Source: Haplodiscus bocki
Lineage: Eukaryota
Assembly: GCA_965655095.1 (NCBI GenBank)
Contig: OZ296655.1
Span: 89,838,001-89,902,000 of the forward strand
Direction: 5' to 3'
DNA: 64,000 bases
The position numbers were made by a program, and so were the translations under genes. This document shows, piece by piece, positions 1-64,000 of the stretch (position 1 is its first letter; each line of letters opens with the position of its first letter). The notes below the pieces were generated by a model that worked only from the letters and a program-made list of their open reading frames with translations, was not told the DNA's origin and made no database searches.

Positions 1-3000
1 GTCAAAACAGCATCTGAAATCTTTCTAAACTATCCGCAATCGTCATGTTTAGTCCGCATTGTTTTATTTACACACCTGCCCTCATAGCGTTTTCAAATTA
101 GGGATGTGTCAGATTTTTCCAAACCTCAGTTTCATAATCCCGAGACTTATCTCCGAGAAGCCATGTGACGTAACGTTCGCCTTCGAAGAATACACTATCC
201 TAACACGTTCTCGACCTATACCTATCCTTATGCTTTTCCGAAGTACCCCTTATCTTAAAACATTGTCGACGTAAACTCTATCTTACTACCTTGTCGACGT
301 GAACCAGTTTTTAATACGATGCCGAAGTATACCCAATTTTAAAACTTTCCCGAACTAGGTCCTATCTTAATACGTTGCCAATTTTTAGCCTATCCTAACA
401 TATTGCCGATCTTTAGCCCATCTTCATACGCTGCCGCCATATCTGAAGACCTTGCTGATCTAAAATGTTTCGTAATACAATACAAAAATATCTGTTCATA
501 TTGCCGAATTAGAGCCTATTTGAATAGGTTGCCGAACTGAAGCTAGTCTTACTACACTGCCACGCCATCTTGAAACATTTCTGGATTATGACATATCTTA
601 CAAACTTTAACCGAAGTATAGCTTATCCTAATACATTTCCATTGGACTTCAATGCAATCTGCTTCTGGAATTTGTCATCACCCAAACTTTAGGTCAATCT
701 TTATGCCAAGTAATTTATCAGAACAGCAACAGCAGTCATCCTAAACTAACCGTAGCCATCATGTTTAGTCCTCATTGTAACATTTACCCACCTGCCATCG
801 TAGCAGTTTCAAATCCGGGACTTGTCGGAAAGTTGATTACAATCCATCGGTTCCATAATCCCCGGACTACCCCCGAGAAACCATAAAGTATGACGTACGG
901 CTCGGAAGATTATCCTATCTTAAGACGTTCTGGACTCTACCTGTTTTAATACTTTTCGAGAGTACACCTTAACTTAACACATTTTCGACGTGTACACTAT
1001 TCTAAACGTTTATCGATGTGTATAAAATAATAATGCGTTGCCCAAGTATATCCTATCTGAACACTTTGCCAAAGTAAAGTCTGTCTTTTGATATTACGGA
1101 TTCACAGTCTGTCTTGATGCACTGCCGCCCTGTTTCACGACATTGCTGAACTACACCGTACTGTAATATATTACCAAACCATCTTAACACATTGTCGAAC
1201 AAAAACGTATCTCAATAAAATTGCTGAACTAAACCTAATCCGACTACATTCCACCTTATCTTAAAACACTCTCAGATTTTAACTTTTCCTGAAAACTAGC
1301 CGAAACATAGCTTATTAAAAAACACTCGCCTCGCATTTCAATGCATCATGATGCTGGAATCTGTCATCACCCAAACTTTAATTTAATCTCTTTGGAAAGC
1401 ATTATGTCAGAACAGCATCTGATTAAAACAGCAGTCATCCTAAACTAACTGCGGGCGTCATGTTTAATCCGCGTCGTATTTTTAACCCATCTGCCATCCT
1501 AGCAGTTTCAAATCCGCAGAATGTCGGAATTTTCATTACCAAACGCTAATTTCGCAATCCCGGGACTACTCCACGCGTACCCATGTAACATAGCCTACGG
1601 CTCCGAAGTATATCCTATCCAAACACGTTCTGGAACTATACCTACCCTACCTTAATACAGTTTCGAAGTACACCTTATCTTATTACAATGTCGACGTGTA
1701 CTTCATCCTATAAACCTTATCACGTTTACATTTTCCTAATCCGTTGCCGAAGTACAGCCTATTTTAGGACAATGCTTACCTATAACCTATCTTCATACAC
1801 TGCCACCCTATCTTAAACCATTGCCGAACTATAGAGTATCATATACATTACCAAACTATCTTAGCCCCTTGCCGAACTTTAGCTTTTCTTAAAAGATTGC
1901 CAAATTGAAGCTAATCTTAATACACTGCGACCCTATCTTATTACATTGCCGGATTAAACCCTATCCTAAAAACTTGCAGAAGCATAGCCTATCTCAATAC
2001 TTTACCTTCTCCTTTCAATGCAACAAGCTACGCAAATTTATCATTCCCCAAAAATTATAGCAACCTTTATGCAAACCAATAGGTCAAAGCAGTATCTGAA
2101 GTCATCCTACACTCTCCGCAGTTGTCATTTTTAGTCAGCATCAACTTGTTTACCCACCTATCGTCCTAGCAGTTCAAATCTGGGATATGTCGGAATTTTC
2201 AATACAAAACCTTAGTGTCAATACCCCGGAACTACCCGTTCGAAAAACCATGTAATCTAAGGTTCCGCTCCAAAGCATATACTATCTGAATACGATCTTG
2301 AACTATACCTATCTTACTTACCTTTCCGAATTACACCGTACCTTAGTACATCGTTCCCGTGTACACTATCTTAATACCTTGCCGAAGCTTACCCTATCCT
2401 GATTCGTTGCTGAATCAAAGCCTATCTCAACACATTGCCGGTCTATAGCCTATCTTGATACACTGCTGCCCTATCTTGAGACCTTGCCGATCTTTGGCCG
2501 CCTATCGTAATTTATTGTCGAATTGAAGCTGGTGTCAATAAACTGCCACCCTCCCTTGGTACATTGCCAAAGTAAAACCTATCCTGAATACTTGCCGAAG
2601 TGTAGCCTATCCTAATATATTTCCCTCAGTTTTCAATGCAACATGCTTAAGAAATTTCTCATCACCCAAACTTTAAATCAATCTTTATGCAAATCATTCA
2701 GTCAAAACAGTATCTGCAGTCGTTCTAAACTATATGCAGTCGTCATGTTTTTTTTAAAACGTATTAACTACCCATCTGCTGTTCTAGCAGATTCGAATTC
2801 GGTAGCTCGCGGAGTTTTCATTTCGAAACCTTAGTTCCATAATCCCGGGACAACCCCACGAGAAACCATGTATTATAGCGTACCGCTCGGTAGCAATTTC
2901 CTTTTTACACGTTCTGGAACTATACTAATCCCAAAAAAATTCCGAAGTACAGCTCACCTCATTATATTGTCGATGTGAACTCTATCATGTTACCTCGTCG

Positions 3001-5733
3001 AAGCGTACCACATCTTAATATGTTGCCAAAGTAAATCCTACTCAAGAGCTTTTCCGAAGTCAATATTGTCTTTATACGTTGCCAATCTAAAGGTTATCTA
3101 AACACGTTCAGGATCTATAGGCTATCTTGATACACTGCCGCCCTGTCTAGAGATATTGCCGAATTATAGCGTATCATCATGCATTACGGAATTATCAAGA
3201 CATATTTCCACTCTCTAGCCTGTCTTGATGCACCGCCGCCCTATCTTGAAACATTGCCGAAATATTGCGTATTGTAATACGTTTCCGAAGTATCTGAACA
3301 TAATGCCGAAATATAGTTTCTCTCAATAGGTTGCCCAACTGAAAGTTATCTTATTATACTGGCGCCCAATCTTAACACATTGCCGGATTATAACCTATCC
3401 TGAAAAATTGTCAAGGTTTAGCCTATCTTGATACATTCCCCTAGGATTTCAATGCAACTTGCAAAAAAAATTCTTCATCACGCAAACAAAAATCATTTTT
3501 TATGCAAAGTGTTGAATCGAAACAGTGTCTGCGGTCATTCCAAACTATCTGCAGGCCTCATCTTTAGTCCGCATTGTCCTTTTTAGCCACATGCCGTCCT
3601 AGCATTTTCAAATCCTGGATGTCGGAACTTGCATTGCTAAACCTTAGTTTCAGAAACCCGAGACTACCCTCCGACAAACCATGTAATCTAATGTGCCGCT
3701 CCTAGGTATATCCTATCATAAGATGTTCTGGAACTATACCTATCTTAATACATTTCTGAAGTACAACTTATCTTACTACAATGTTGAAGTGTACCCCATC
3801 TGAATACGTGGCCGATGTATAACTCTAATTCAAAACCTTTCAGAAGGATTTTCTATCTTATTACGTTGCCGAACTTCAGTCTATCTGATCACCTTGCCGA
3901 TCTATAGCCTATCCTGATTCACTTTTGCCCTGTCCAAAGACCTTGACAAACATAGCGTATCGTAATACATTACCAAACGATCTTAACACAATGCCGAATC
4001 ATAGAATGTCTCAATAAATTGCCGAACTGAAGACGATCCTGCTACAATGCCACCCGATGTATATCCATAATAACAGATTGCCGAACTGAAGATAACGCAA
4101 AAACTGCCACCCTATCTTCATACTTTGCCGTATTAGAATCTATCCTACAACTTTAGCCTATCTTAATGAAGCTTCATACAATAAAATCCTCCTGGATTTC
4201 AATGCAACATGCTACTGGAAATTTTCATCACTCAAACATTAAAACAATCTTAATGCAATTCATAGCATCTCATTGAATTGCTGAACTGAAGCTAATCCTA
4301 CTGCACTGCCACCCTATGCTGAAACAATACCAGATTATAACTTCTCCTGAAAAAGTGCCAAATGTAAAGCCTTTCTAAAAGTATTCCGCTCGGTTTTCAA
4401 TGCAATTTGCTAATGACCTTTGTAATCACGCAAAATTTATTTCAAAATTTATGCAAAGTGTTGAATCGAAACAGCATCCGGAGTCATTTTAATGTATCCG
4501 CAGGCGTCATGTTCAGTCCGCATCTTTTTTTACCCACCTGGCATCATAGCAGTTTGAAATCCGGGATTTGTAGTAAACTTCATTCTCAAACCTTAGTTTA
4601 AAAATCCGGGGACCATCTTCCGAGAAACCATGTAAACTATCCTACCGCTCCGAAGTATATGCTATGCTAATACGTTTCAAAACTCTGTCTATTTTAATGG
4701 GTTTCCAAAGTACAGCTTATCTTGGTAAATTGTCAAAACGTACACCTTTTTAAGACGTTGCCGAAGTATACCTTTCATCAAAACTTGTCGGAGGTGTCTG
4801 CTAACGTAATACGTTGCCGAGCTATAGTATATGTTAACACAATGCCGATCTGTAGCCTATCTTGATACTCTAACGCCCTATCTTAAGACATTGCTGATGT
4901 ATGGCGTATCTTATTACATTATCAAACTATCTGAACACAAGGCGGAACAATTGCATCTCTCAATAGATAGCCGAACTGAAGCTAATCTTATTATACTGCC
5001 ACCCTGTCTTATTACAAAGCCGGACTTTAACCTGTCCTGAAAAAATGCCGAAGTATAGCCTCTACTAATACATTCCTTTCGGATTTCAAAGCAAATGGCT
5101 AATGCACTCTGCCATCATCCAATTTTTATATCAATTCTTGTGAAAAGCGGTGAATCTAAACAGTATCTTCAACCATTCAGAACTACCCGCAGTCGTCATG
5201 TTTAGTCCGCATCGTGTTATTTACCCACCTGCCGTTCTAGTATTGTCAAATCCAGGATATGTCGCAAATTTCATCACTAAACTTTAGATTTGAAACGAGG
5301 GCATACCCTATGAGGAACCATGTAATCTAAGGTACCGCTCCGAAGTATATCCTAACCTAACTCGTTCTGGAAATAAACCTACCTTAATACTTTTACAAAG
5401 TACTGATTATCTTGATACATTGTCGAAATGTGCCCCGTTTTGGACGTTGCCGAAGTATACCCTACTTCAAAAATTTTCTGGAGTGTCTGCTAACGTAATA
5501 CATTGACAAGCTATAGTTTATCTTAACACAATGCCGATCTTTAGCCTATCTTGATACACTGCCGCCCAATCTTAAGATATTGCCGAACCACAGCGTATCG
5601 TAATTTCCATAATTTCAACACAATGTCGAACTCTAGCATAATTTGACAGCTTCCCTTCAGATTTCAAATCATCATGCAACAGAAATTTGTCAACACCCAA
5701 CTTTTAAATCAATTTTTCATGCGAAGCGATTTA
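1..5733 (+). repeat. Layer 1: divergent short monomers (about 580-815 bp) lacking the ~335 bp module
   Basis: Anchors at about 1, 717, 1406, 2083, 2701, 3516, 4465, 5154 and 5734. Each minisatellite block runs directly into ...(GGA)TTTCAATGCA, for example at 3444-3456 and 5080-5093. No AGCCAATCAG-containing module is seen before about 6390. Confidence 0.88.
2960..3440 (+). repeat. Representative internal minisatellite module (28 bp and 21 bp units), present in every monomer
   Basis: The 28-mer consensus is about TTGCCGAACTATAGCCTATCTTAATACA and the 21-mer about CTGCCGCCCTATCTTAAGACA. From about 3079 the units read 28,28,21,28,21,28,21,28,21,28,28,21,28,28. Confidence 0.9.
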
Positions 5734-6229
5734 GTCGAAACAGTTTTTGAAGTCACCCTAAATTGTCCAGAGGCATCATAAACCATCTCAATTGCTATTT
5801 TCATCCCTCTGCCGCCAAAGAAGTTTCAGAACCGTGATATGTCGAAGGTTTCATTACTAAACCACAGTTTCACGAAAAAGTAATATAACTTAAAGATCCG
5901 ATGTACTTCCTCTCCTAACACGATCTGGAACTATACCAATCTTAATACCTTACCGAAGTACTTTTTAACTTATTAAACTGTCGACGTGTCCTCTATCTTG
6001 TCAAACTGTACCTCAACCTAATACGTTGCCAAATTATTGTCCATCTCAACACACTGCCAGTCTATAGCCTATCTTGGTTCCTTGCCGCCCTTTGTCAAGA
6101 AATTGCCGAAATATATCATATCGTAATACATAACCAAACTGACTTAGCACTTTACCGATCTTAAGACTGTTTTCATACACTGCCGACCTATCTGAAGAAT
6201 TTGATGAGCTATAGCGTATTGTAATTCAT

Positions 6230-9200
6230 TACCAAACTATCCTAAAACTTTGCCGATCTAAGGCCAATCTGAAAAGATTGCTGAACCGACGTCAATCACA
6301 AAAACTGCTACCCCATCTCAGTACATTGCCGCGTTGTAACACATCCTAACTATTTGCCGAAGTTTAGCTTATCTTATTACAGTCCTCTCACGTTGCGTGA
6401 AAACTGTACTCAGCCGATCATAATCGAGCTATACGTAACACGAGGGCTGCCGAGTTAAATGGAGGTAACTTCGCGGCCCACATAAAAAGTCGGTTTTCTA
6501 TAGCTCTTCTTAATACATAGGGATCTTCAAAACTTGTAAAAAAACAAACAACCTAGTTCTTAAAACAGAGAAAGTAATTAGAATAGGGCAACCAGTCAAA
6601 GATTTTGACGCTGCAGAAAATTGTTGATTAGATGCTACAACAGGGAAAGCAATGAACTTTCAAAATGAGATCCCTTCCGTTCCCTTTGAAATCTTCGAAA
6701 AGCTGATTTTACAAGGTTTTGATTCACCTTCTTTGCAACATGCTACTGAAATTTATCATCATCCAAGCATTAAATCAATCTTTTCGCGCAACATGAAGTC
6801 AAAACAGTGTCTGAAGTCATATTAACTATCCGGAGGCGTCAAGTGTAGTCTGCATCATAGTTTATACACACCTGCCTTCCGAGCAGTTTCACTTCCGGGA
6901 TGTGTCGGGAAATTTCGTCACTAAATCTTAGGTTGGAAATGTCGGGACTACCCCTCAAGAAAATGTTTGAAAAAACCTATCGCTCCAAAGGGAAACCTAT
7001 TCTAAGACATTCTGCAACTATAACTATCCTATTGCATTTCCGAAGTACACGTTATCTTAAAATGATGTCAACGTATGCCCATTCCTAACGCTTTGTTGAT
7101 GCGTACCCTATGTTAATATACTGCCGAAGTATACGCTACTTTAAAACTTTCCCGAAGTATGTCCGAACTTAGTACGTTACAGATTTATAGCCAATCTTAA
7201 CACATTGCCAATCTATAGGCTATCTTTTCACACTGCTGCACTATCCTGAGACATTGCCGAACTAAAGGGTATCGTGGAACATTATGAACTGCCTTAACAA
7301 ATTGCTGAACCATAGCCTATCGCAATAGATTGCCAAACCAAAGGTAGCGAGAATGCACTGCCACAGTATCCTAACACATTGTCGGATTACAACCTATTCT
7401 TTGAAATTGCCTAAGTATAGCTTATATCATTGCACTCTTCTCGGATTTCGTAGAAAGTTATACTGAGCCAACCAAAATCGAGCAATATTTAAACCGAGGT
7501 CTCCTGACTAAAATGGAGGTCCCTCCTTGGCTCTCAGGACAAACCGGTCTTCTATGGCTTATCATATTACATGTGGATCTTCAAAACGTAAAACACAATA
7601 CAAAAAAGGGCCTTAGGACGAAGAAAAAATATCAGTAGAGGTCAACCAATCGAATTCTTCGACGCTGTTTAAAGATGTTGTTCATCAGCCACAACAATCA
7701 AGGCAAAAAAGTTCCCAATTGACATCCCTTCATATACAAGTAAAGCCTTCAAAGTTCAAATTTCACTAATATTTGATTTGACTTCAATGCAACACGCTAC
7801 TGAACTTTGTCATCACCCAAACTTTAAATCAATTTTTTCCAAAGGATGATGTATTAACAGTATCTGCAGTCGTCCTAAGCTATCCACAGGCGTTATAAGT
7901 AGTCTGCTTTGTAGAATTTACCAGCTTGACGTCCAAGGAGGCTGAAATTCGGGATGTGTCGGGATTTTTTAAAATAAACTTTGCATTCAAAAACCCTGGA
8001 ATACCCTCCGACAAACAATGTAATGTAACCTACCGCTTCGAAGTGAATCTCATTCTAACACGTTGCAGAACTATCCTATTACATTTCCGATGTACACATT
8101 ATCTTAAAACATTGTCAACGCCTACCTTATCTTAATGCTTTGTCGACGTGTATCATATCCTAGTACACTGCCGGAGTATACCCTACAATAAACTTTTCCG
8201 ATGTATATCTTAATACTTTTCTGAAGTACAACTCATGTCATGTTAATACAATATTGAAGTGTACCCCATCTGGATACGTTGCCGAAGTATACCCTAATTC
8301 AAACCTTTTCAGAAGCATCTCCCATAAAATTACGTTGCCGAACTTCGGTCTATCTTATCAGCTTGCCGATGTATAGACTATCTTGGTTCAGTGCCGCATT
8401 TTCTCAGGACTTTGCCGAAACGTAACGTAGTGTAATACATAACCAAACTATCTTACAACTTTGCCGATCTAAAGCCAATGTCATAAGATTGCTGAACCGA
8501 CGTCAATCACAAAAACCGCTACCCCATCTCAGTACATTGCCGGGTTGTAACACATCCTAACTATTTGCCGAAGTTTAGCTTATCTTTTTACAGTCCTCTC
8601 ACGTTGCGTGAAAACTGTACTCAACCGATCATAATCGAGCTATACGTAACCCGAGGGCTGTCGAGTTAATTGGAGGTAACTTCGCGGCACCCAGAAAAGT
8701 TCGATTTTGTTTAGTTCTTCCTAGTACATAGGATCTTCAAAACTTGTAAAAAAAACAAACAGTTTAGGCCTTAACACAGAGAAAGTAATTAGAATAGGGC
8801 AACCAGTCAAAGATTTTGACGCTGTAGAAAATTGTTGATTAGATGCTATAACAGGAAAAGCAATGGTTTTTCAAAATGATTTCCCTTCATTTACAATTGA
8901 AATCTTCAAAAACTAGATTTTACAGGGTTTCGATTTACCTTCATTCCAACTTTCTACTGAAATTTATCATCATCAAAGCATTAAATCAGTCGTTTTGCGA
9001 GACATGACGTTAAACAGTGTCTGAAGTAATGATGAACTGTCCAGAGGTGTCTTAATTAGTCCGCATCGTATTGTTTACCCACCTGCCGTCTGAGCAGATT
9101 CAAATCCGGGATCTGTCAGGAACTTTTACACCAAATCTGAGGTTCATAATCCCGGGAGCACCCTTCGAGAAACTGTGTGAATTAACCTGCCGCCGTAAAA

Positions 9201-10200
9201 TGAATCTTATCCTAAAACAATCTGGAACTATACCTATCCTTTTACCTTTCCGGAGTACACGTTATCTTAAAATGTTTTCAACGTATGCCCTATCTTAATG
9301 CTTTGTGGACGCGTACCCTATGTTAATATATTGCCGAAGTATACCCTACATTAAAACTTTCCGGAAGTATGTCCGACCTTAATACGTCACCGACCTATAG
9401 CCAATCATAACACATTGCCGATCTCTAGCCTATCTTGTCACAGTGCCGCCCCATCCTGAGACTTCTCCGAAATATAGCGTATAGTGAAACAGTACGAACT
9501 ACCTTAACAAATTGCTCAACTATAGCCTATCGCAATAGATTGCGAAACCAAAGCTGGCGTCAATGCACTGCCACACTATCCTAATACATTGCAGGATTAC
9601 AACCTGTTCTATGAAATTGCCTAAGTACAGCGTATATTATTGCATTCCTCTCGGCTTTCGTCAAAAGTTAAACTAAGCCAATCAGAATCGAGCAAAAATT
9701 AACCCACAGGCTCTCGACTAAAATGGAGGTCTGTCCTTGGCCCTCAGGACAAAACGGCTTTCTATGGTTTATCTTATTACATTGGATCTTCAAAATTTAG
9801 AAAACAATACAAGGAAAGAGCCTTAGGACGGAGAAAAAAATCAGAAGAGGTCAACCAATCGAAATCTTTGACGCTGCTGAAAAACGTTGTTCATTAGCCG
9901 TGACAATGAAGGCAAGAAACGTTCAAATTGACGTTTCCTTCATATCCAATTAAAGCCTTCAAAGTTCAAAACTTACTAGTTATTGAATTGACTTCACTGC
10001 AGCACGCTACTGATTTTTGTCATCGACCAAACTCTAAACACGTTCCAGAACTATAGCTATCCGTTTTCATTTCTGAAGTAAACATTATCCTAAAACAGTT
10101 TAAACGCTACCCTATCTTATTGCTTTGCCGACGTGTATCATAATTTACTACACTGCTGAAGTATAGCCTACAAAAAAACTTTTCCGAAGTATATCCGCCC
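6230..10200 (+). repeat. Older dimer duplication, period about 2210 bp
   Basis: GCTGAACCGACGTCAATCACAAAAAC...CAGTCCTCTCACGTTGCGTGAAAACTGTACTC is shared by about 6280-6411 and about 8491-8622. Anchors are at 6798/9009 and second modules at 7441/9651. It is visibly more diverged than the 1864 bp pair. Confidence 0.85.
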
Positions 10201-27671: not shown

Positions 27672-27681
27672 ATTACGTAAC
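27672..27681. promoter_or_regulatory. PAR-bZIP/NFIL3-type site ATTACGTAAC (RTTAYGTAAY), representative copy; function untested
   Basis: ATTACGTAAC lies just downstream of the CCAAT-box position in most monomers from about 16.8 to 48.1 kb. This is a motif match only. Confidence 0.25.
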
Positions 27682-51200: not shown

Positions 51201-54200
51201 AACCACACAGCCAATATTTAGCCTCTCTTGATAAAATGCCGCTCTTTTTTAGGATATTATCAAAAAATGGCGTATTGTTATACAAAAACAACCTACCTCA
51301 AAACATTGAAAAACGGTAGCCTATCTTAAAAGACTGGCGAGCTGAAGCTAATGTTAAAGAACTTCCACCCTGTCTTTACACAATCTCGGAAAAAAAATTT
51401 CCCTCGTATAGCCTGTCTTTTTACAATCACGTCGGATTTCGCATAACTGTTTTCAGCCGTTCAGAGTTCATCATTACGTAGCGCAAGAGTTCTCGATTGA
51501 AATAGAGATTTTGTCGCGACTCTCATATCAAATCGGTTTCATGTAGCTAATTTTAAAACATGGGAATCTTCAAGACTTAAAAAACAATACCAACAAATTA
51601 AGCCCTAACGCAGAGAAGATATTCAGAAGAAGTCAACTAGCGATGTCTTCGACGCTGCAGATAATTGTTGCTTACATGCTGCAACAGTGAAAGTAAGGAA
51701 CTTTGGGAAGAATAACACTTCAATTCCTATTGAAATCTTCAAAGACTAAATTTCACTAGGTCTTGATTTACCTTCTTTGCAACTTGCTTTTGGAATTTTT
51801 CATAATTTGAACATCAGTTCGATTTTTTGGCAAAGTATCAAGTCAAAACAGTGTCTGCAGTCATCCTAAACTTTCCATAGGCGTCATAATTCTTCCACAT
51901 CGTTCCTCCTACAAACTTGTTGTCGCTGCAATTTCATATCCGGGGATTTGCCGGATTTTTCATTTTTTAACTTTAGTTTAAGAGTCCCGGGACTACCCTC
52001 TGAGAAACCATTAAACCTAACGTAACGCTTCGAACTATATCTTATCTGAACACGTTCTCGAAGTATATCTACCCTAAAGACATCCAAAGTAAACGTTATT
52101 TTATTACATTATCAACGTGTAAACTAGCCTATTGCTTTTTGGACGTGTACCCTTACGTAATACGTTGCAGAAGTATACCCCATTTGAAGTTTTTTCCGGA
52201 GTACTTTCTATTTTATTACGTTCCAAAATATAGCCTATCTTCCGCATTGTTGATCTATACTATCTTTCGACATACTGTTGCCTATCTCGAGACATTTCCG
52301 AAATATGGCGTATCCTTTTACATTACGAAACTATGTAACCACAAAGCCAATATTTAGCCTCTCTTGATAAAATGCCGCTCTTTTTTAGGACAATATCAAA
52401 AAATGGCGTATTGTTATACAAAAACAACCTACCTCAAAACATTGAAAAACAGTAGCCTATCTTAAAAGACTGGCGAGCTGAAGCTAATGTTAAAGAACTT
52501 CCACCCTGTCTTTACACAATCTCGGAAAAAAAATTTCCCTCGTATAGCCTGTCTTTTTACAATCACGTCGGATTTCGCATAAGTGTTTTCAGCCGTTCAG
52601 AGTTCATCATTACGTAGCGCAAGAGTTCTCGATTGAAATAGAAATTTTGTCGCGACTCTCATATCAAATCGGTTTCATGTAGCTAATTTTAAAACATGGG
52701 AATCTTCAAGACTTAAAAAACAATACCAACAAATTAGGCCCTAACGCAGAGAAGATATTCAGAAGAAGTCAACTAGCGAAGTCTTCAACGCTGCAGATAA
52801 TTGTTGCTTACATGCTGCAACAGTGAAAGTAAGGAACTTTCGGAAGAATAACACTTCAATTCCTATTGAAATCTTCAAAGACTAACTTTCACTAGGTCTT
52901 GATTTACCTTCTTTGCAACTTGCTTTTGGAATTTTTCATAATTTGAACATCAGTTCGATTTTTTGGCAAAGTATCAAGTCAAAACAGTGTCTGCAGTCAT
53001 CCTAAACTTTCCATAGGCGTCATAATTCTTCCACATCGTTCCTCCTACAAACTTGTTGTCGCTGCAATTTCATATCCGGGGATTTGCCGGATTTTTCATT
53101 TTTTAACTTTAGTTTAAGAGTCCCGGGACTACCCTCTGAGAAACCATTAAACCTAACGTAACGCTTCGAACTATATCTTATCTGAACACGTTCTCGAAGT
53201 ATATCTACCCTAAAGACATCCAAAGTAAACGTTATTTTATTACATTATCAACGTGTAAACTAGCCTATTGCTTTTTGGACGTGTACCCTTACGTAATACG
53301 TTGCAGAAGTATACCCCATTTGAAGTTTTTTCCGGAGTACTTTCTATTTTATTACGTTCCAAAATATAGCCTATCTTCCGCATTGTTGATCTATACTATC
53401 TTTCGACATACTGTTGCCTATCTCGAGACATTTCCGAAATATGGCGTATCCTTTTACATTACGAAACTATGTAACCACAAAGCCAATATTTAGCCTCTCT
53501 TGATAAAATGCCGCTCTTTTTTAGGACAATATCAAAAAATGGCGTATTGTTATACAAAAACAACCTACCTCAAAACATTGAAAAACAGTAGCCTATCTTA
53601 AAAGACTGGCGAGCTGAAGCTAATGTTAAAGAACTTCCACCCTGTCTTTACACAATCTCGGAAAAAAAATTTCCCTCGTATAGCCTGTCTTTTTACAATC
53701 ACGTCGGATTTCGCATAAGTGTTTTCAGCCGTTCAGAGTTCATCATTACGTAGCGCAAGAGTTCTCGATTGAAATAGAAATTTTGTCGCGACTCTCATAT
53801 CAAATCGGTTTCATGTAGCTAATTTTAAAACATGGGAATCTTCAAGACTTAAAAAACAATACCAACAAATTAGGCCCTAACGCAGAGAAGATATTCAGAA
53901 GAAGTCAACTATCGAAGTCTTCGACGCTGCAGATAATTGTTGCTTACATGCTGCAACAGTGAAAGTAAGAAACTTTCGGAAGAATAACACTTCAATTCCT
54001 ATTGAAATCTTCGAAGACTAAATTTCACTAGGTCTTGATTTACCTTCTTTGCAACTTGCTTTTAGAATTTTTCATAATTTGAACATCAGTTCGATATTTT
54101 GGCAAAGTATCAAGTCAAAACAGTGTCTGCAGTCATCCTAAACTTTCCACAGGCGTCATAATTCTTCCACATCGTTCCTCCTACAAACTTGTTGTCGCTG

Positions 54201-57200
54201 CAATTTCATATCCGGGGATTTGCCGGATTTTTCATTTTTTAACTTTAGTTTAAGAGTCCCGGGACTACCCTCTGAGAAACCATTAAACCTAACGTAACGC
54301 TTCGAACTTTATCTTATCTGAACACGTTCTCGAAGTATATCTACCCTAAAGACATCCAAAGTAAACGTTATTTTATTACATTATCAACGTGTAAACTAGC
54401 CTATTGCTTTTTGGACGTGTACCCTTACGTAATACGTTGCAGAAGTATACCCCATTTGAAATTTTTTCTGGAGTACTTTCTATTTTATTACGTTCCAAAA
54501 TATAGCCTATCTTCCGCATTGTTGATCTATACTATCTTTCGACATACTGTTGCCTATCTCGAGACATTTCCGAAATATGGCGTATCCTTTTACATTACGA
54601 AACTATGTAACCACAAAGCCAATATTTAGCCTCTCTTGATAAAATGCCGCTCTTTTTTAGGACAATATCAAAAAATGGCGTATTGTTATACAAAAGCAAC
54701 CTACCTCAAAACATTGAAAAACAGTAGCCTATCTTAAAAGACTGGCGAGCTGAAGCTAATGTTAAAGAACTTCCACCCTGTCTTTACACAATCTCGGAAA
54801 AAAAATTTCCCTCGTATAGCCTGTCTTTTTACAATCACGTCGGATTTCGCATAAGTGTTTTCAGCCGTTCAGAGTTCATCATTACGTTGCGCAAGAGTTC
54901 TCGATTGAAATAGAAATTTTGTCGCGACTCTCATATCAAATCGGTTTCATGTAGCTAATTTTAAAACATGGGAATCTTCAAGACTTAAAAAACAATACCA
55001 ACAAATTAGGCCCTAACGCAGAGAAGATATTCAGAAGAAGTCAACTATCGAAGTCTTCGACGCTGCAGATAATTGTTGCTTACATGCTGCAACAGTGAAA
55101 GTAAGAAACTTTCGGAAGAATAACACTTCAATTCCTATTGAAATCTTCGAAGACTAAATTTCACTAGGTCTTGATTTACCTTCTTTGCAACTTGCTTTTA
55201 GAATTTTTCATAATTTGAACATCAGTTCGATATTTTGGCAAAGTATCAAGTCAAAACAGTGTCTGCAGTCATCCTAAACTTTCCACAGGCGTCATAATTC
55301 TTCCACATCGTTCCTCCTACAAACTTGTTGTCGCTGCAATTTCATATCCGGGGATTTGCCGGATTTTTCATTTTTTAACTTTAGTTTAAGAGTCCCGGGA
55401 CTACCCTCTGAGAAACCATTAAACCTAACGTAACGCTTCGAACTATATCTTATCTGAACACGTTCTCGAAGTATATCTACCCTAAAGACATCCAAAGTAA
55501 ACGTTATTTTATTACATTATCAACGTGTAAACTAGCCTATTGCTTTTTGGACGTGTACCCTTACGTAATACGTTGCAGAAGTATACCCCATTTGAAATTT
55601 TTTCTGGAGTACTTTCTATTTTATTACGTTCCAAAATATAGCCTATCTTCCGCATTGTTGATCTATACTATCTTTCGACATACTGTTGCCTATCTCGAGA
55701 CATTTCCGAAATATGGCGTATCCTTTTACATTACGAAACTATGTAACCACAAAGCCAATATTTAGCCTCTCTTGATAAAATGCCGCTCTTTTTTAGGACA
55801 ATATCAAAAAATGGCGTATTGTTATACAAAAGCAACCTACCTCAAAACATTGAAAAACAGTAGCCTATCTTAAAAGACTGGCGAGCTGAAGCTAATGTTA
55901 AAGAACTTCCACCCTGTCTTTACACAATCTCGGAAAAAAAATTTCCCTCGTATAGCCTGTCTTTTTACAATCACGTCGGATTTCGCATAAGTGTTTTCAG
56001 CCGTTCAGAGTTCATCATTACGTAGCGCAAGAGTTCTCGATTGAAATAGAAATTTTGTCGCGACTCTCATATCAAATCGGTTTCATGTAGCTAATTTTAA
56101 AACATGGGAATCTTCAAGACTTAAAAAACAATACCAACAAATTAGGCCCTAACGCAGAGAAGATATTCAGAAGAAGTCAACTAGCGAAGTCTTCGACGCT
56201 GCAGATAATTGTTGCTTACATGCTGCAACAGTGAAAGTAAGGAACTTTCGGAAGAATAACACTTCAATTCCTATTGAAATCTTCAAAGACTAACTTTCAC
56301 TAGGTCTTGATTTACCTTCTTTGCAACTTGCTTTTGGAATTTTTCATAATTTGAACATCAGTTCGATATTTTGGCAAAGTATCAAGTCAAAACAGTGTCT
56401 GCAGTCATCCTAAACTTTCCACAGGCGTCATAATTCTTCCACATCGTTCCTCCTACAAACTTGTTGTCGCTGCAATTTCATATCCGGGATTTGCCGGATT
56501 TTTCATTTTTTAACTTTAGTTTAAGAGTCCCGGGACTACCCTCTGAGAAACCATTAAACCTAACGTAACGCTTCGAACTATATCTTATATGAACACGTTC
56601 TCGAAGTATATCTACCCTAAAGACATCCAAAGTAAACGTTAGTTTATTACATTATCAACGTGTAAACTAGCCTATTGCTTTTTGGACGTGTACCCTTACG
56701 TAATACGTTGCAGAAGTATACCCCGTTTGAAATTTTTTCCGGAGTACTTTCTATTTTATTACGTTCCAAAATATAGCCTATCTTCCGCATTGTTGATCTA
56801 TACTATCTTTCGACATACTCTTGCCTATCTCGAGACATTTCCGAAATAAGGCGTATCCTTTTACATTACGAAACTATGTAACCACAAAGCCAATATTTAG
56901 CCTCTCTTGATAAAATGCCGCTCTTTTTTAGGACAATATCAAAAAATGGCGTATTGTTATACAAAAACAACCTACCTCAAAACATTGAAAAACAGTAGCT
57001 TATCTTAAAAGACTGGCGAGCTGAAGCTAATGTTAAAGAACTTCCACCCTGTCTTTACACAATCTCGGAAAAAAAATTTCCCTCGTATAGCCTGTCTTTT
57101 TACAATCACGTCGGATTTCGCATAAGTGTTTTCAGCCGTTCAGAGTTCATCATTACGTAGCGCAAGAGTTCTCGATTGAAATAGAAATTTTGTCGCGACT

Positions 57201-60200
57201 CTCATATCAAATCGGTTTCATGTAGCTAATTTTAAAACATGGGAATCTTCAAGACTTAAAAAACAATACCAACAAATTAGGCCCTAACGCAGAGAAGATA
57301 TTCAGAAGAAGTCAACTATCGAAGTCTTCGACGCTGCAGATAATTGTTGCTTACATGCTGCAACAGTGAAAGTAAGGAACTTTGGGAAGAATAACACTTC
57401 AATTCCTATTGAAATCTTCAAAGACCAAATTTCACTAGGTCTTGATTTACCTTCTTTGCAACTTGCTTTTGGAATTTTTCATAATTTGAACATCAGTTCG
57501 ATATTTTGGCAAAGTATCAAGTCAAAACAGTGTCTGCAGTCATCCTAAACTTTCCACAGGCGTCATAATTCTTCCACATCGTTCCTCCTACAAACTTGTT
57601 GTCGCTTCAATTTCATATCCGGGGATTTGCCGGATTTTTCATTTTTTAACTTTAGTTTAAGAGTCCCGGGACTACCCTCTGAGAAACCATTAAAACTAAC
57701 GTAACGCTTCGAACAATATCTTATCTGAACACGTTCTCGAAGTATATCTACCCTAAAGACATCCAAAGTAAACGTTATTTTATTATATTATCAACGTGTA
57801 AACTAGCCTATTGCTTTTTGGACGTGTACCCTTACGTAATACGTTGCAGAAGTATACCCCATTTGAAAATTTTTCTGGAGTACTTTCTATTTTATTACGT
57901 TCCAAAATATAGCCTATCTTCCGCATTGTTGATCTATACTATCTTTCGACATTTTGTTGCCTATCTCGAGACATTTCCGAAATATGGCGTATCCTTTTAC
58001 ATTACGAAACTATGTAACCACAAAGCCAATATTTAGCCTTTCTTGATAAAATGCCGCTCTTTTTTAGGACAATATCAAAAAATGGCGTATTGTTATACAA
58101 AAACAACCTACCTCAAAACATTGATAAACGGTAGCCTATTTAGAAGACTGGCGAGCTGAAGCTAATGTTAAAGAACTTCCACCCTGTCTTTACACAATCT
58201 CGGAAAAAAAATTTCCCTCGTATAGCCTGTCTTTTTACAATCACGTCGGATTTCGCATAAGTGTTTTCAGCCGTTCAGAGTTCATCATTACGTAGCGCAA
58301 GAGTTCTCGATTGAAATAGAAATTTTGTCGCGACTCTCATATCAAATCGGTTTCATGTAGCTAATTTTAAAACATGGGAATCTTCAAGACTTAAAAAACA
58401 ATACCAACAAATTAGGCCCTAACGCAGAGAAGATATTCAGAAGAAGTCAACTAGCGAAGTCTTCGACGCTGCAGATAATTGTTGCTTACATGCTGCAACA
58501 GTGAAAGTAAGGAACTTTCGGAAGAATAACACTTCAATTCCTATTGAAATCTTCAAAGACTAACTTTCACTAGGTCTTGATTTACCTTCTTTGCAACTTG
58601 CTTTTGGAATTTTTCATAATTTGAACATCAGTTCGATATTTTGGCAAAGTATCAAGTCAAAACAGTGTCTGCAGTCATCCTAAACTTTCCACAGGCGTCA
58701 TAATTCTTCCACATCGTTCCTCCTACAAACTTGTTGTCGCTGCAATTTCATATCCGGGATTTGCCGGATTTTTCATTTTTTAACTTTAGTTTAAGAGTCC
58801 CGGGACTACCCTCTGAGAAACCATTAAACCTAACGTAACGCTTCGAACTATATCTTATCTGAACACGTTCTCGAAGTATATCTACCCTAAAGACATCCAA
58901 AGTAAACGTTATTTTATTACATTATCAACGTGTAAACTAGCCTATTGCTTTTTGGACGTGTACCCTTACGTAATACGTTGCAGAAGTATACCCCGTTTGA
59001 AATTTTTTCCGGAGTACTTTCTATTTTATTACGTTCCAAAATATAGCCTATCTTCCGCATTGTTGATCTATACTATCTTTCGACATACTCTTGCCTATCT
59101 CGAGACATTTCCGAAATATGGCGTATCCTTTTACATTACGAAACTATGTAACCACAAAGCCAATATTTAGCCTCTCTTGATAAAATGCCGCTCTTTTTTA
59201 GGACAATATCAAAAAATGGCGTATTGTTATACAAAAACAACCTACCTCAAAACATTGAAAAACGGTAGCCTATCTTAAAAGACTGGCGAGCTGAAGCTAT
59301 TGTTAAAGGACTTCCACCCTGTCTTTACACAATCTCGGAAAAAAAATTTCCCTCGTATAGCCCGTCTTTTTACAATCACGTCGGATTTCGCATAAGTGTT
59401 TTCAGCCGTTCAGAGTTCATCATTACGTAGCGCAAGAGTTCTCGATTGAAATACAGATTTTGTCGCGACTCTCATATCAAATCGGTTTCATGTAGCTAAT
59501 TTTAAAACATGGGAATGTTCAAGACTTAAAAAACAATACCAACAAATTAGGCCCTAACGCAGAGAAGATATTCAGAAGAAGTCAACTAGCGAAGTCTTCG
59601 ACGCTGCAGATAATTGTTGCTTACATGCTGCAACAGTGAAAGTAAGGAACTTTGGGAAGAATAACACTTCAATTCCTATTGAAATCTTCAAAGACCAAAT
59701 TTCACTAGGTCTTGATTTACCTTCTTTGCAACTTGCTTTTGGAATTTTTCATAATTTGAACATCAGTTCGATATTTTGGCAAAGTATCAAGTCAAAACAG
59801 TGTCTGCAGTCATCCTAAACTTTCCACAGGCGTCATAATTCTTCCACATCGTTCCTCCTACAAACTTGTTGTCGCTTCAATTTCATATCCGGGGATTTGC
59901 CGGTTTTTTCATTTTTTAACTTTAGTTTAAGAGTCCCGGGACTACCCTCTGAGAAACCATTAAACCTAACGTAACGCTTCGAACAATATCTTATCTGAAC
60001 ACGTTCTCGAAGTATATCTACCCTAAAGACATCCAAAGTAAACGTTATTTTATTACATTATCAACGTGTAAACTAGCCTATTGCTTTTTGGACGTGTACC
60101 CTTACGTAATACGTTGCAGAAGTATACCCCATTTGAAAATTTTTCTGGAGTACTTTCTATTTTATTACGTTCCAAAATATAGCCTATCTTCCGCATTGTT

Positions 60201-63200
60201 GATCTATACTATCTTTCGACATTTTGTTGCCTATCTCGAGACATTTCCGAAATATGGCGTATCCTTTTACATTACGAAACTATGTAACCACAAAGCCAAT
60301 ATTTAGCCTTTCTTGATAAAATGCCGCTCTTTTTTAGGACAATATCAAAAAATGGCGTATTGTTATACAAAAACAACCTACCTCAAAACATTGATAAACG
60401 GTAGCCTATTTAGAAGACTGGCGAGCTGAAGCTAATGTTAAAGAACTTCCACCCTGTCTTTACACAATCTCGGAAAAAAAATTTCCCTCGTATAGCCTGT
60501 CTTTTTACAATCACGTCGGATTTCGCATAAGTGTTTTCAGCCGTTCAGAGTTCATCATTACGTAGCGCAAGAGTTCTCGATTGAAATAGAAATTTTGTCG
60601 CGACTCTCATATCAAATCGGTTTCATGTAGCTAATTTTAAAACATGGGAATCTTCAAGACTTAAAAAACAATACCAACAAATTAGGCCCTAACGCAGAGA
60701 AGATATTCAGAAGAAGTCAACTAGCGAAGTCTTCGACGCTGCAGATAATTGTTGCTTACATGCTGCAACAGTGAAAGTAAGGAACTTTCGGAAGAATAAC
60801 ACTTCAATTCCTATTGAAATCTTCAAAGACTAACTTTCACTAGGTCTTGATTTACCTTCTTTGCAACTTGCTTTTGGAATTTTTCATAATTTGAACATCA
60901 GTTCGATATTTTGGCAAAGTATCAAGTCAAAACAGTGTCTGCAGTCATCCTAAACTTTCCACAGGCGTCATAATTCTTCCACATCGTTCCTCCTACAAAC
61001 TTGTTGTCGCTGCAATTTCATATCCGGGATTTGCCGGATTTTTCATTTTTTAACTTTAGTTTAAGAGTCCCGGGACTACCCTCTGAGAAACCATTAAACC
61101 TAACGTAACGCTTCGAACTATATCTTATCTGAACACGTTCTCGAAGTATATCTACCCTAAAGACATCCAAAGTAAACGTTATTTTATTACATTATCAACG
61201 TGTAAACTAGCCTATTGCTTTTTGGACTTGTACCCTTACGTAATACGTTGCAGAAGTATACCCCATTTGAAAATTTTTCTGGAGTACTTTCTATTTTATT
61301 ACGTTCCAAAATATAGCCTATCTTCCGCATTGTTGATCTATACTATCTTTCGACATTTTGTTGCCTATCTCGAGACATTTCCGAAATATGGCGTATCCTT
61401 TTACATTACGAAACTATGTAACCACAAAGCCAATATTTAGCCTCTCTTGATAAAATGCCGCTCTTTTTTAGGACAATATCAAAAAATGGCGTATTGTTAT
61501 ACAAAAACAACCTACCTCAAAACATTGAAAAACAGTAGCCTATCTTAAAAGACTGGCGAGCTGAAGCTAATGTTAAAGAACTTCCACCCTGTCTTTACAC
61601 AATCTCGGAAAAAAAATTTCCCTCGTATAGCCTGTCTTTTTACAATCACGTCGGATTTCGCATAAGTGTTTTCAGCCGTTCAGAGTTCATCATTACGTAG
61701 CGCAAGAGTTCTCGATTGAAATAGAAATTTTGTCGCGACTCTCATATCAAATCGGTTTCATGTAGCTAATTTTAAAACATGGGAATCTTCAAGACTTAAA
61801 AAACAATACCAACAAATTAGGCCCTAACGCAGAGAAGATATTCAGAAGAAGTCAACTATCGAAGTCTTCGACGCTGCAGATAATTGTTGCTTACATGCTG
61901 CAACAGTGAAAGTAAGGAACTTTGGGAAGAATAACACTTCAATTCCTATTGAAATCTTCAAAGACCAAATTTCACTAGGTCTTGATTTACCTTCTTTGCA
62001 ACTTGCTTTTGGAATTTTTCATAATTTGAACATCAGTTCGATATTTTGGCAAAGTATCAAGTCAAAACAGTGTCTGCAGTCATCCTAAACTTTCCACAGG
62101 CGTCATAATTCTTCCACATCGTTCCTCCTACAAACTTGTTGTCGCTTCAATTTCATATCCGGGGATTTGCCGGATTTTTCATTTTTTAACTTTAGTTTAA
62201 GAGTCCCGGGACTACCCTCTGAGAAACCATTAAAACTAACGTAACGCTTCGAACAATATCTTATCTGAACACGTTCTCGAAGTATATCTACCCTAAAGAC
62301 ATCCAAAGTAAACGTTATTTTATTATATTATCAACGTGTAAACTAGCCTATTGCTTTTTGGACGTGTACCCTTACGTAATACGTTGCAGAAGTATACCCC
62401 ATTTGAAAATTTTTCTGGAGTACTTTCTATTTTATTACGTTCCAAAATATAGCCTATCTTCCGCATTGTTGATCTATACTATCTTTCGACATTTTGTTGC
62501 CTATCTCGAGACATTTCCGAAATATGGCGTATCCTTTTACATTACGAAACTATGTAACCACAAAGCCAATATTTAGCCTTTCTTGATAAAATGCCGCTCT
62601 TTTTTAGGACAATATCAAAAAATGGCGTATTGTTATACAAAAACAACCTACCTCAAAACATTGATAAACGGTAGCCTATTTAGAAGACTGGCGAGCTGAA
62701 GCTAATGTTAAAGAACTTCCACCCTGTCTTTACACAATCTCGGAAAAAAAATTTCCCTCGTATAGCCTGTCTTTTTACAATCACGTCGGATTTCGCATAA
62801 GTGTTTTCAGCCGTTCAGAGTTCATCATTACGTAGCGCAAGAGTTCTCGATTGAAATAGAAATTTTGTCGCGACTCTCATATCAAATCGGTTTCATGTAG
62901 CTAATTTTAAAACATGGGAATCTTCAAGACTTAAAAAACAATACCAACAAATTAGGCCCTAACGCAGAGAAGATATTCAGAAGAAGTCAACTAGCGAAGT
63001 CTTCGACGCTGCAGATAATTGTTGCTTACATGCTGCAACAGTGAAAGTAAGGAACTTTCGGAAGAATAACACTTCAATTCCTATTGAAATCTTCAAAGAC
63101 TAACTTTCACTAGGTCTTGATTTACCTTCTTTGCAACTTGCTTTTGGAATTTTTCATAATTTGAACATCAGTTCGATATTTTGGCAAAGTATCAAGTCAA

Positions 63201-64000
63201 AACAGTGTCTGCAGTCATCCTAAACTTTCCACAGGCGTCATAATTCTTCCACATCGTTCCTCCTACAAACTTGTTGTCGCTGCAATTTCATATCCGGGAT
63301 TTGCCGGATTTTTCATTTTTTAACTTTAGTTTAAGAGTCCCGGGACTAGCCTCTGAGAAACCATTAAACCTAACGTAACGCTTCGAACTATATCTTATCT
63401 GAACACGTTCTCGAAGTATATCTACCCTAAAGACATCCAAAGTAAACGTTATTTTATTACATTATCAACGTGTAAACTAGCCTATTGCTTTTTGGACGTG
63501 TACCCTTACGTAATACGTTGCAGAAGTATACCCCGTTTGAAATTTTTTCCGGAGTACTTTCTATTTTATTACGTTCCAAAATATAGCCTATCTTCCGCAT
63601 TGTTGATCTATACTATCTTTCGACATACTCTTGCCTATCTCGAGACATTTCCGAAATATGGCGTATCCTTTTACATTACGAAACTATGTAACCACAAAGC
63701 CAATATTTAGCCTCTCTTGATAAAATGCCGCTCTTTTTTAGGACAATATCAAAAAATGGCGTATTGTTATACAAAAACAACCTACCTCAAAACATTGAAA
63801 AACGGTAGCCTATCTTAAAAGACTGGCGAGCTGAAGCTATTGTTAAAGAACTTCCACCCTGTCTTTACACAATCTCGGAAAAAAAATTTCCCTCGTATAG
63901 CCCGTCTTTTTACAATCACGTCGGATTTCGCATAAGTGTTTTCAGCCGTTCAGAGTTCATCATTACGTAGCGCAAGAGTTCTCGATTGAAATACAGATTT
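48271..64000 (+). repeat. Layer 4: highly homogenised young monomers (1134-1136 bp)
   Basis: All copies carry AGCCGTTCAGAGTTCATC, GTTCTCGAAGTATATC, GTGTAAACTAGCCTATTGC and CCTTACGTAATAC. Neighbours differ by only a few bases, and identical ORF translations repeat. Confidence 0.95.
56386..64000 (+). repeat. Dimeric HOR (2270 bp) with a superimposed tetrameric period (4540 bp)
   Basis: The ORF MKVRNFGK occurs only at 57366, 59636 and 61906 (step 2270). Private variants recur at a step of 4540: CTGAAGCTAT 59291/63831, CCCGTCTTTT 59361/63901, ATACAGATTT 59451/63991, TAAAACTAAC 57691/62231 and TATTATATTA 57781/62321. Confidence 0.92.

What the first reader, a model, noticed from the sequence alone, without database searches (positions are those of the whole stretch)
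1..64000. Layered age gradient recording the step-by-step assembly of a 1.13 kb macrosatellite; candidate centromere or pericentromere edge
Seen: left to right, the family goes from divergent short monomers, to mixed short and long, to fixed-length mosaic monomers, to near-identical monomers, to a dimer/tetramer HOR. There is no foreign insertion and no strand switch. Established: layered expansion, with old divergent monomers flanking a homogeneous HOR core, is the organisation of primate alpha-satellite centromeres. Inference: this is the flank of an expanding array whose core lies to the right. The monomer is unusually long and composite compared with the common 150-180 bp centromeric units, and ancestral-looking intermediates survive in order.
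Basis: partly seen in the sequence, partly recalled or inferred. Interest (0 to 1): 0.75.

Follow-up and report, generated by a model that had tools for sequence, protein, structure and literature searches.

The report
Satellite grown from a Maverick end
This is a real, layered tandem array of 1.13 kb units, but it is a small single-locus satellite (about 92 kb) that grew in place from the right end of a decayed virus-like jumping gene (a Maverick/Polinton); nothing in the sequence points to a centromere.

Summary
The window is 99.98% one tandem family on one strand. From left to right it has short diverged units, then mixed units, then 24 fixed-length units (81-89% like the rightmost ones), then units 98-100% alike. 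A rooted tree follows position.

The interpretation mostly fails. The young core starts at 48.4 kb and ends only 11.8 kb past the window. An 11-kb older layer follows, and the array stops at window coordinate 86,997. There are 87 units in all, about 92 kb. Every pattern and DNA search of the 1.5-Gb assembly finds full-length units and their diagnostic junction only at C8:89.83-89.93 Mb, 5.1 Mb from the chromosome end.

Directly to the left, in the same orientation, lies a decayed Maverick/Polinton. It has a protein-primed polymerase, an integrase and inverted ends. The long unit is colinear with that element's end: the last 213 bp of its last gene plus its right inverted repeat, including a 28-bp minisatellite. 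The "optional module" is therefore native Maverick sequence, not a captured piece.

I read it as a transposon-derived satellite amplified in place by unequal exchange.

The parts
1..6018 (+). Zone of short units (T anchors u7-u15, 579-945 bp). Each unit is the last ~40 bp of segment I, then T (inner part of the inverted repeat), then M (the 28-bp minisatellite). The outer repeat part and most of I are missing.
   Evidence: Neighbouring T anchors are 59-75% identical.
1..2404 (+). In-window part of copy 2 of a 4,169-bp segmental duplication. Copy 1 is at window coordinates -5937..-1769 and copy 2 at -1768..2404. It carries 1 kb of Maverick body plus five short units.
   Evidence: 99.98% identity with one gap. 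The Maverick body homology is repeated at -1768..-783.
6019..21173 (+). Mixed zone of short and long diverged units (u15-u29). It includes the first long units, at 6019-9164, which are sister to all the regular units in the tree.
12229..15957 (+). Two copies of a 1,864-bp long-plus-short unit pair, re-duplicated inside the old zone.
   Evidence: 97.4% identity. A spacing of 1864 dominates the k-mer counts at 12-15 kb.
21174..48366 (+). Middle layers: 24 fixed-length units (u30-u53, 1128-1141 bp) in sub-blocks A, B and C. At the T anchor they are 80-96% identical to the core.
   Evidence: Mean K2P is 0.13 within the layer and 0.14-0.17 to the core.
47462..48594 (+). Hybrid monomer at the left border of the core. 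It is C-like up to about column 750 and core-like (100%) after that.
   Evidence: Sliding-window identity.
48367..64000 (+). In-window part of the young core (u54-u78). The core runs on to window coordinate 76,753, for 25 units in all.
   Evidence: 98-100% pairwise identity, mean K2P 0.017.
56317..64000 (+). Local 4-unit block duplication (u61-64 against u65-68; it ends at 65,396, outside the window).
   Evidence: u62=u66 and u64=u68 are 100% identical, u63/u67 99.8%, u61/u65 99.0%.
52001..52540 (+). Anatomy of one example unit, segment M: a degenerate 28-bp minisatellite homologous to the minisatellite in Maverick inverted repeats.
   Evidence: Self-match at lag 28 is 0.41 against a median of 0.275. 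It matches 28-bp arrays inside Maverick ends on many chromosomes.
52541..52712 (+). Segment O': the outer part of the Maverick inverted repeat. Homology stops about 36 bp short of the element's terminus.
   Evidence: Alignment with four Maverick termini, including the resident element's left end read in reverse complement.
52727..52939 (+). Segment I: a relic of the 3' end of the Maverick's last gene (residues ~332-412 of a 449-residue frame, probably the double jelly-roll capsid protein).
   Evidence: 70-76% DNA identity to dispersed copies. tblastn gives 73 hits along the array. The capsid reading is a lead only.
52940..53136 (+). Segment T: the inner part of the Maverick inverted repeat. 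It was used as the anchor for cutting units.
   Evidence: Its first ~94 bp are present at both ends of a dispersed copy, in inverted orientation. In the resident element it directly follows I.

Best explanation
The array is a transposon-derived macrosatellite that arose in place from the right end of one resident Maverick/Polinton element.

Layout:
- The element lies at window coordinates -22,266 to about -4,950 (C8:89,815,735-89,833,050), in plus orientation, and is decayed.
- The element's native end reads I (3' end of its last gene), then T (inner inverted repeat), then M (28-bp minisatellite), then O (outer inverted repeat).
- The 1.13-kb unit is I-T-M-O', where O' lacks the last ~36 bp of the terminus. 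O' is joined head to tail to the next I.
- The ~0.7-kb unit is a second duplication frame holding only the tail of I, then T and M.

Inferred history:
- The length-variable minisatellite in the inverted repeat favoured misaligned replication or repair.
- Unequal exchange between homologous units then expanded the array.
- Newer variants were amplified again and again inside the array, which pushed older copies to both sides.
- The last burst made 25 units that differ by about 1.7%, with 2- and 4-unit block duplications.

The array is non-coding and I see no evidence of a cellular function.
For: Shown:
- Dispersed ~16-18 kb elements have inverted ends beginning AGTAGT. They have an rve integrase (Pfam E 2e-8). 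They carry an 828-residue frame whose homologues hold PF03175, the protein-primed polymerase B family.
- The DNA directly left of the array is colinear with such an element. tblastn finds every one of its frames there in order, fragmented. Its left terminus is at -22,266.
- The element's body runs without a break into I and then T, which is unit 1 of the array.
- Array units share the resident element's direct I-to-T junction. The two dispersed copies compared have about 600 bp more at that point.
- O' aligns with Maverick termini. I is a relic of the last frame.
- The O'-to-I junction occurs nowhere else in the 1.5-Gb assembly. All 13 candidates were scored: 12 are in the locus, and the one outside (C8:2.16 Mb) is a 96-bp match to I that does not span the junction.
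- The rooted tree is comb-like and follows position.
- O' in the core scores lower against Maverick ends (44-50 bits) than in the middle and old units (54-95 bits), which fits the core being the most derived.
- Both borders of the core are in-register hybrid monomers.

Rough support only:
- Contig word depth of core-type pieces is about 20 times that of low-copy pieces in two samples. This fits about 25 core copies.

Inferred: the role of the minisatellite, and unequal exchange as the driving process.
Against: - The original right terminus (the last 36 bp plus a target-site duplication) was not found. The array ends at monomer position 941, at the inner boundary of the inverted repeat, and a ~346-bp dispersed repeat follows. 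The first duplication event therefore cannot be reconstructed.
- All units are 30-40% diverged from the resident element's own T.
- Segment I of the units is no closer to the resident copy, which carries a 55-bp deletion there, than to the dispersed copies. A close relative of the resident element, rather than this exact copy, could have been the template.
- The tree rests on 228 columns and many of its forks are unresolved.
- The depths come from contigs, not raw reads, and the tool warns that they are not copy numbers.
Confidence: 0.8

Rival explanations
1. This is a centromeric or pericentromeric satellite, the edge of the functional centromere of this chromosome.
For: The architecture is layered, with a young core between older flanks, and block duplications are beginning. 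The neighbourhood is rich in Mavericks: 2 of 8 sampled 10-kb stretches to the right are Maverick. Chromosome-specific centromere repeats exist in some animals and plants (my own knowledge, not checked here).
Against: The array is about 92 kb with a 28-kb core, and it is bounded on both sides by ordinary sequence. The family is absent from every other contig of the assembly. It lies 5.1 Mb from the end of a 95-Mb chromosome. Layering is what any array evolving by unequal exchange is expected to show (my own knowledge, not tested here). Contig depth fits the assembled copy number.
Confidence: 0.05
2. The assembly has collapsed a much larger array, so the small size and the sharp layers are artefacts.
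For: Units that are 98-100% identical are hard to assemble. The 4,169-bp duplication at 99.98% could be an assembly error, or a sign of one. Only contigs could be laid, not raw reads.
Against: Core-type contigs have word depths of about 400-460 against about 19 for low-copy pieces in X1. In X4 the figures are about 850-1436 against about 55-70. That gives roughly 14-25 copies, against 25 assembled. There is no gap inside the array; the nearest is 8 kb beyond its end. Both borders of the core are clean in-register hybrids.
Confidence: 0.07
3. The array was seeded by repeated Maverick insertions into one another (the double-insertion route to tandem transposon dimers, PMC5932611) and not by internal duplication of one element's end.
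For: The genome has about 11,000 first-look candidates for the Maverick polymerase, and all 91 that were scored matched. A stray Maverick terminus fragment lies 730 bp beyond the array.
Against: Units lack the last ~36 bp of the terminus, and no target-site duplications are seen. All long units share one O'-to-I junction, which points to a single origin. Units hold about 1.1 kb of a 16-kb element. The array continues the resident element's body without a break.
Confidence: 0.06

Closest known systems
Transposon-derived satellite DNAs (reviewed in PMC9659126; mechanism study PMC5932611)
   Same: The monomer is homologous to part of a transposon. The inverted repeats and their internal tandem repeats are the favoured source, and expansion is ascribed to unequal exchange or repair (PMC9659126, section 2.2).
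   Different: The source is a Maverick/Polinton, a class the 2022 review does not mention at all (0 occurrences). The parent element is still attached, which gives a natural root for the tree. The unit is long (1.13 kb) and includes a relic of a gene.
LmiSat34-299 of the migratory locust (PMC4935994)
   Same: It is a satellite reported to be homologous to the coding sequence of a Polinton.
   Different: It was known only from read clustering, has a 299-bp unit, and has no locus structure or parent copy described. Here most of the unit is inverted repeat, and the whole array with its parent is resolved.
Layered alpha-satellite centromeres of primates
   Same: A young homogeneous core lies between older, more diverged layers on both sides, and the tree order matches position. 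The comparison with primates rests on my own knowledge.
   Different: The scale is 92 kb rather than megabases. It is one locus in the genome, there is no homogenised higher-order repeat, the unit is not nucleosome-sized, and there is no evidence of kinetochore function.

Membership tests
Maverick/Polinton element (the parent of the array) | [quoted passage not shown] | tested here: met
   Homologues of the 828-residue frame of a dispersed copy carry PF03175. tblastn finds that frame in the resident element at -21,183..-19,579, in pieces.
Maverick/Polinton element (the parent of the array) | Retrovirus-like (rve) integrase | tested here: met
   PF00665 at E 2e-8, 34.8 bits against a cut-off of 32.6, in a dispersed copy. 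tblastn hits in the resident element at -8,106..-7,279.
Maverick/Polinton element (the parent of the array) | Terminal inverted repeats and a length of 15-20 kb | tested here: met
   Dispersed copies are about 16-18 kb, with ends inverted to each other and termini beginning AGTAGT. The resident element's left inverted repeat is at -22,266..-21,775 or further in. Its right one is replaced by the array.
Maverick/Polinton element (the parent of the array) | Double jelly-roll capsid gene | tested here: inconclusive
   For the 449-residue last frame there is only a language-model lead: nearby clusters carry DJR-like_dom or Capsid_N. Pfam found nothing.
Maverick/Polinton element (the parent of the array) | 5-6 bp target-site duplication | tested here: inconclusive
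   The left flank was read. The original right terminus was not found.
Transposon-derived satellite | The whole monomer can be traced to a contiguous part of a transposon | tested here: met
   I-T-M-O' is colinear with the element's end. Only about 15 bp at the junction remain unassigned.
Transposon-derived satellite | Head-to-tail tandem array of many copies | tested here: met
   87 T anchors on one strand over about 92 kb.
Centromeric satellite | A large array at one site on each (or at least this) chromosome, with the family shared or megabase-sized | tested here: not met
   A single 92-kb locus, with no copies elsewhere.
Centromeric satellite | Bound by CENP-A/CENH3, with a kinetochore forming there | not testable with these tools
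   No chromatin data are available.
Centromeric satellite | A homogenised higher-order repeat core | tested here: not met
   Mean identity at lags 1-10 is flat at 97.9-98.6%. Only one 4-unit and one 2-unit block duplication exist.

The most novel reading that the evidence does not exclude
In this Maverick-laden animal genome, the minisatellite-bearing inverted repeats of Mavericks are a recurrent birthplace of kilobase-unit satellites. This locus would then be a rooted, ordered record of the whole path from provirus end to homogenised array. Such arrays could later be recruited as chromosome-specific centromere seeds or as small-RNA source loci against Mavericks.
Probability: 0.15. Interest if true: 0.6.

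Novelty: new member of a known kind. Interest (0 to 1): 0.4.

Why it matters
Satellites are often said to come from transposons, but the parent copy has usually been lost. Here the parent Maverick is still attached. The tree of units can therefore be rooted, the order of the layers can be read, and the first junction is defined to within about 15 bp. That makes the locus a clean small-scale model for how layered arrays form without any centromere function. It also adds Maverick/Polinton elements to the known sources of satellite DNA. For the scan, it shows that layering alone is no sign of a centromere.

Tried and rejected
- Tandem Repeats Finder cannot see the family because its longest period is 500 bp.
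- The first whole-genome DNA search skipped the near-identical copies as 'very common words'. I used exact-pattern searches and queries from older units instead.
- Rfam found no RNA family in three core units.
- Pfam found no host gene in the longest open frames of ten flank samples, only another Maverick.
- I first took the integrase hit for an LTR retrotransposon. No long direct repeats were found and the ends are inverted, so I rejected that.
- A search for the resident element's right terminus or a target-site duplication beyond the array found only a stray terminus fragment in left-end orientation.
- One search was sent with the wrong locus id. It still showed that a right-layer unit hits only this locus.
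- The organism could not be named. Earlier notes guess a coral; I did not test this.
- Raw reads were not on offer, so true depth, methylation and transcription are untested.
- I built no consensus and no repaired version of any Maverick copy.
Full report
**Setting.** The window is G000:C8:89,838,001-89,902,000, plus strand, on a 95,027,854-bp chromosome-scale contig of a 1.5-Gb animal assembly with 6,626 contigs. G+C is 36-40%, with a constant excess of C over G on the plus strand. All coordinates below are window coordinates. Negative values and values above 64,000 lie outside the window and were read from loci L001, L009, L010, L013-L017 and L002, joined into one 150-kb stretch.

**The observation.**
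- Spacings of 1128-1137 bp dominate among repeated 15-mers. Only 2 reverse-complement 15-mers are shared.
- A core unit (52001-53136) laid on the window shows four zones:
  - 1-6018: short units that lack positions ~540-908, 60-67% identical.
  - 6019-21400: short and long units mixed.
  - 21404-48594: 24 units of 1128-1137 bp, 81-89% identical.
  - 48595-64000: 13.6 units, 98.4-100% identical.
- The pairwise matrix shows blocks, not a smooth slope.
- I cut units at a 228-bp anchor, T, and found 87 anchors between -4,990 and 86,056.
- Identity to the core rises with position (Spearman 0.93 in the window). There is no trend inside the left zone (0.09), so the change is stepwise.
- 99.98% of the window is covered by at least two plus-strand hits to family units, and no minus-strand hit exists. 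There is no foreign insertion and no strand switch.
- The claimed higher-order repeat is one 4-unit block duplication (u61-64 against u65-68) and one 2-unit duplication. Mean identity at lags 1-10 in the core is flat at 97.9-98.6%.

**Extent of the array.**
- The array runs past the window, but not far. The core is u54-u78 (25 units, 48,367-76,753).
- Nine older units follow. At the T anchor they are 83-93% like the core.
- The array then stops at 86,997, at unit position 941.
- The only assembly gap nearby is at 95,257-95,456, which is 8 kb beyond the end.
- To the left, family pieces reach -4,990.
- The whole array is about 92 kb, and the window holds about two thirds of it.

**Is the family anywhere else?**
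- Two motifs of 35 and 37 bases that are invariant in the core, searched with up to 3 mismatches over the whole assembly, gave 43 and 56 hits. All lie in C8:89.861-89.925 Mb, and the reversed control patterns gave none.
- An old-unit query spanning the diagnostic O'-to-I junction gave 13 candidates, all scored. Twelve are in the locus. The one outside, at C8:2.16 Mb, is a 96-bp match to I that does not span the junction.
- The same junction query taken from a middle-layer unit hit only the locus, among the 40 of 77 candidates that were scored.
- A right-layer unit also hit only this locus, with 40 of 106 candidates scored.
- Outside the locus only two parts of the unit match: positions 31-241, as 28-bp minisatellites on many chromosomes, and positions 755-939, as single dispersed copies.

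**What the dispersed matches are.**
- The 755-939 matches lie in copies of one 16-18 kb element, 83-90% alike.
- Its ends are inverted relative to each other, and the termini begin AGTAGT.
- One copy has a 312-residue frame with an rve integrase domain (E 2e-8, above the Pfam cut-off).
- The same copy has an 828-residue frame on the other strand whose many homologues carry PF03175, the protein-primed polymerase B family.
- This is a Maverick/Polinton. The genome is full of them: 10,957 first-look candidates for PF03175, and all 91 that were scored matched. Two of eight 10-kb samples to the right of the array are Maverick.
- I compared the copies only. I built no consensus and no repaired version.

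**The parent element.**
- Directly left of the array, from -21,048 to -6,209, the DNA is colinear with a dispersed copy at 64-73% identity, in the same orientation as the array.
- tblastn places all fifteen frames of that copy there in order, but in pieces.
- The left terminus and inverted repeat are at -22,266 and inward, with a short stretch of the same minisatellite in inverted orientation.
- At its right side the body runs without a break into segment I (ending at -4,952), followed at once by T (from -4,956). That T is unit 1 of the array.

**Anatomy of the unit, in unit positions.**

| Segment | Positions | What it is |
|---|---|---|
| M | 1 to ~540 | Degenerate 28-bp minisatellite of the inverted repeat |
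| O' | ~541-712 | Outer part of the inverted repeat; homology to four Maverick termini stops about 36 bp short of the terminus |
| I | ~727-939 | Relic of the 3' end of the element's last frame (residues ~332-412 of 449); 73 tblastn hits along the array |
| T | 940-1136 | Inner part of the inverted repeat; its first ~94 bp are present at both ends of a dispersed copy |

- A language-model search suggests that the last frame is the double jelly-roll capsid protein. This is a lead only.
- The long unit is therefore the native order I-T-M-O', with O' joined to the next I.
- Units share the resident element's direct I-to-T junction. The two dispersed copies compared have about 600 bp more there.
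- Short units keep the last ~40 bp of I, then T and M.

**Polarity and mechanism.**
- A maximum-likelihood tree of T, rooted on the resident element's own T, is comb-like. Old units are basal. The first long units (6.7 and 8.9 kb) are sister to all 58 regular units (SH-aLRT 100). Then come the A types, then B together with u79-80 and u86-87 from the far side, then u43-48, then u81-85, then u51-53, then the core (96). Zone labels need 13 changes against 46.6 when shuffled.
- O' of core units scores lower against Maverick ends (44-50 bits) than that of the middle and old units (54-95 bits). This is independent support for the same polarity.
- Mean K2P is 0.017 within the core, 0.09-0.13 within the middle and right layers, and 0.11-0.18 between those layers and the core.
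- Neighbouring units in the old zone are only 59-75% identical.
- Both borders of the core are in-register hybrid monomers, as expected from unequal homologous exchange or gene conversion.
- The old zone is still being re-copied in larger blocks: 4,169 bp at 99.98% (including 1 kb of Maverick body), 1,864 bp at 97.4% and 2,211 bp at 83%.
- The role of the minisatellite as the trigger, and unequal exchange as the engine, are inferences.

**Is the assembly trustworthy here?** Only Logan contigs could be laid, and the tool warns that their depths are not copy numbers.
- Core-type pieces have word depths of about 400-460 in X1 and about 850-1436 in X4.
- Low-copy pieces of the family have about 19 in X1 and about 55-70 in X4.
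- That is roughly 14-25 fold, which fits the 25 assembled core units in two samples.
- A run of another organism label (X5) holds three 151-bp pieces that are 96-98% like the core, so a relative has the family too.

**What stays open.**
- The resident element's right terminus and target-site duplication were not found.
- The array ends at the inner boundary of the inverted repeat (unit position 941).
- About 47 bp beyond the end lies a ~346-bp dispersed repeat with about 5,500 first-look candidates.
- At 87,727-87,824 there is a stray Maverick terminus in left-end orientation.
- All units are 30-40% diverged from the resident T. I of the units is no closer to the resident copy, which has a 55-bp deletion there, than to the dispersed copies.
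- The exact template and the first event therefore cannot be reconstructed.

**Comparison with what is known.**
- Satellites derived from transposons, especially from their inverted repeats and internal tandem repeats, are well described (PMC9659126; PMC5932611).
- That review does not mention Mavericks.
- A locust satellite with homology to a Polinton coding sequence has been reported from read clustering (PMC4935994).
- I file this as a new member of a known kind.
- An unchecked first-reader note (s1-369318) reports another Maverick-born array elsewhere in this genome.

**Verdict.** The descriptive observation is right, and the layering is real and rooted.

Noticed in passing
window coordinates -5937..2404 (window 1-2404, plus L009): A 4,169-bp tandem duplication at 99.98% identity with one gap. 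It carries 1 kb of Maverick body plus five short units, inside the oldest zone. It is either very recent or an assembly error.
   Followed up: partly
L014:3727-3824 (window coordinates 87,727-87,824): A Maverick terminus fragment of about 100 bp, beginning AGTAGT, in left-end orientation, 730 bp beyond the array. No Maverick genes lie behind it.
   Followed up: partly
L014:3044-3390 (window coordinates ~87,044-87,390): A ~346-bp dispersed repeat about 47 bp past the array's end. It has about 5,500 first-look candidates genome-wide, 83-89% alike, which looks like a SINE or MITE.
   Followed up: partly
window coordinate 86,997 (L014:2997): The array ends at unit position 941, within a few bases of the inner boundary of the Maverick inverted repeat. 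By chance this would happen about 1 time in 100. It is unexplained.
   Followed up: no
whole genome G000: There are 10,957 first-look candidates for the Maverick polymerase family PF03175, and all 91 that were scored matched. Mavericks may make up a sizeable share of this genome.
   Followed up: partly
window 1-64000 and flanks: CpG observed/expected is 1.03-1.23 in the array and highest in the core. It is 0.79 in the resident and a dispersed Maverick and 0.82-0.96 in the flanks. The transition/transversion ratio among units is only about 0.85. There is no sign of methylation-driven decay in the array.
   Followed up: partly
L023:2345-5194 (C7, near 3.0 Mb), and L024-L027: The 28-bp minisatellite in Maverick inverted repeats varies from about 0.3 to 2.8 kb between copies. 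One compared copy has a 30-bp unit instead. Three loci also carry a repeat of about 51 bp next to it.
   Followed up: partly
run X5 (organism B), laid on window 48606-48756 and 51205-51473: Three 151-bp pieces from a run with a different organism label are 96-98% identical to core units, so a relative carries the family.
   Followed up: partly
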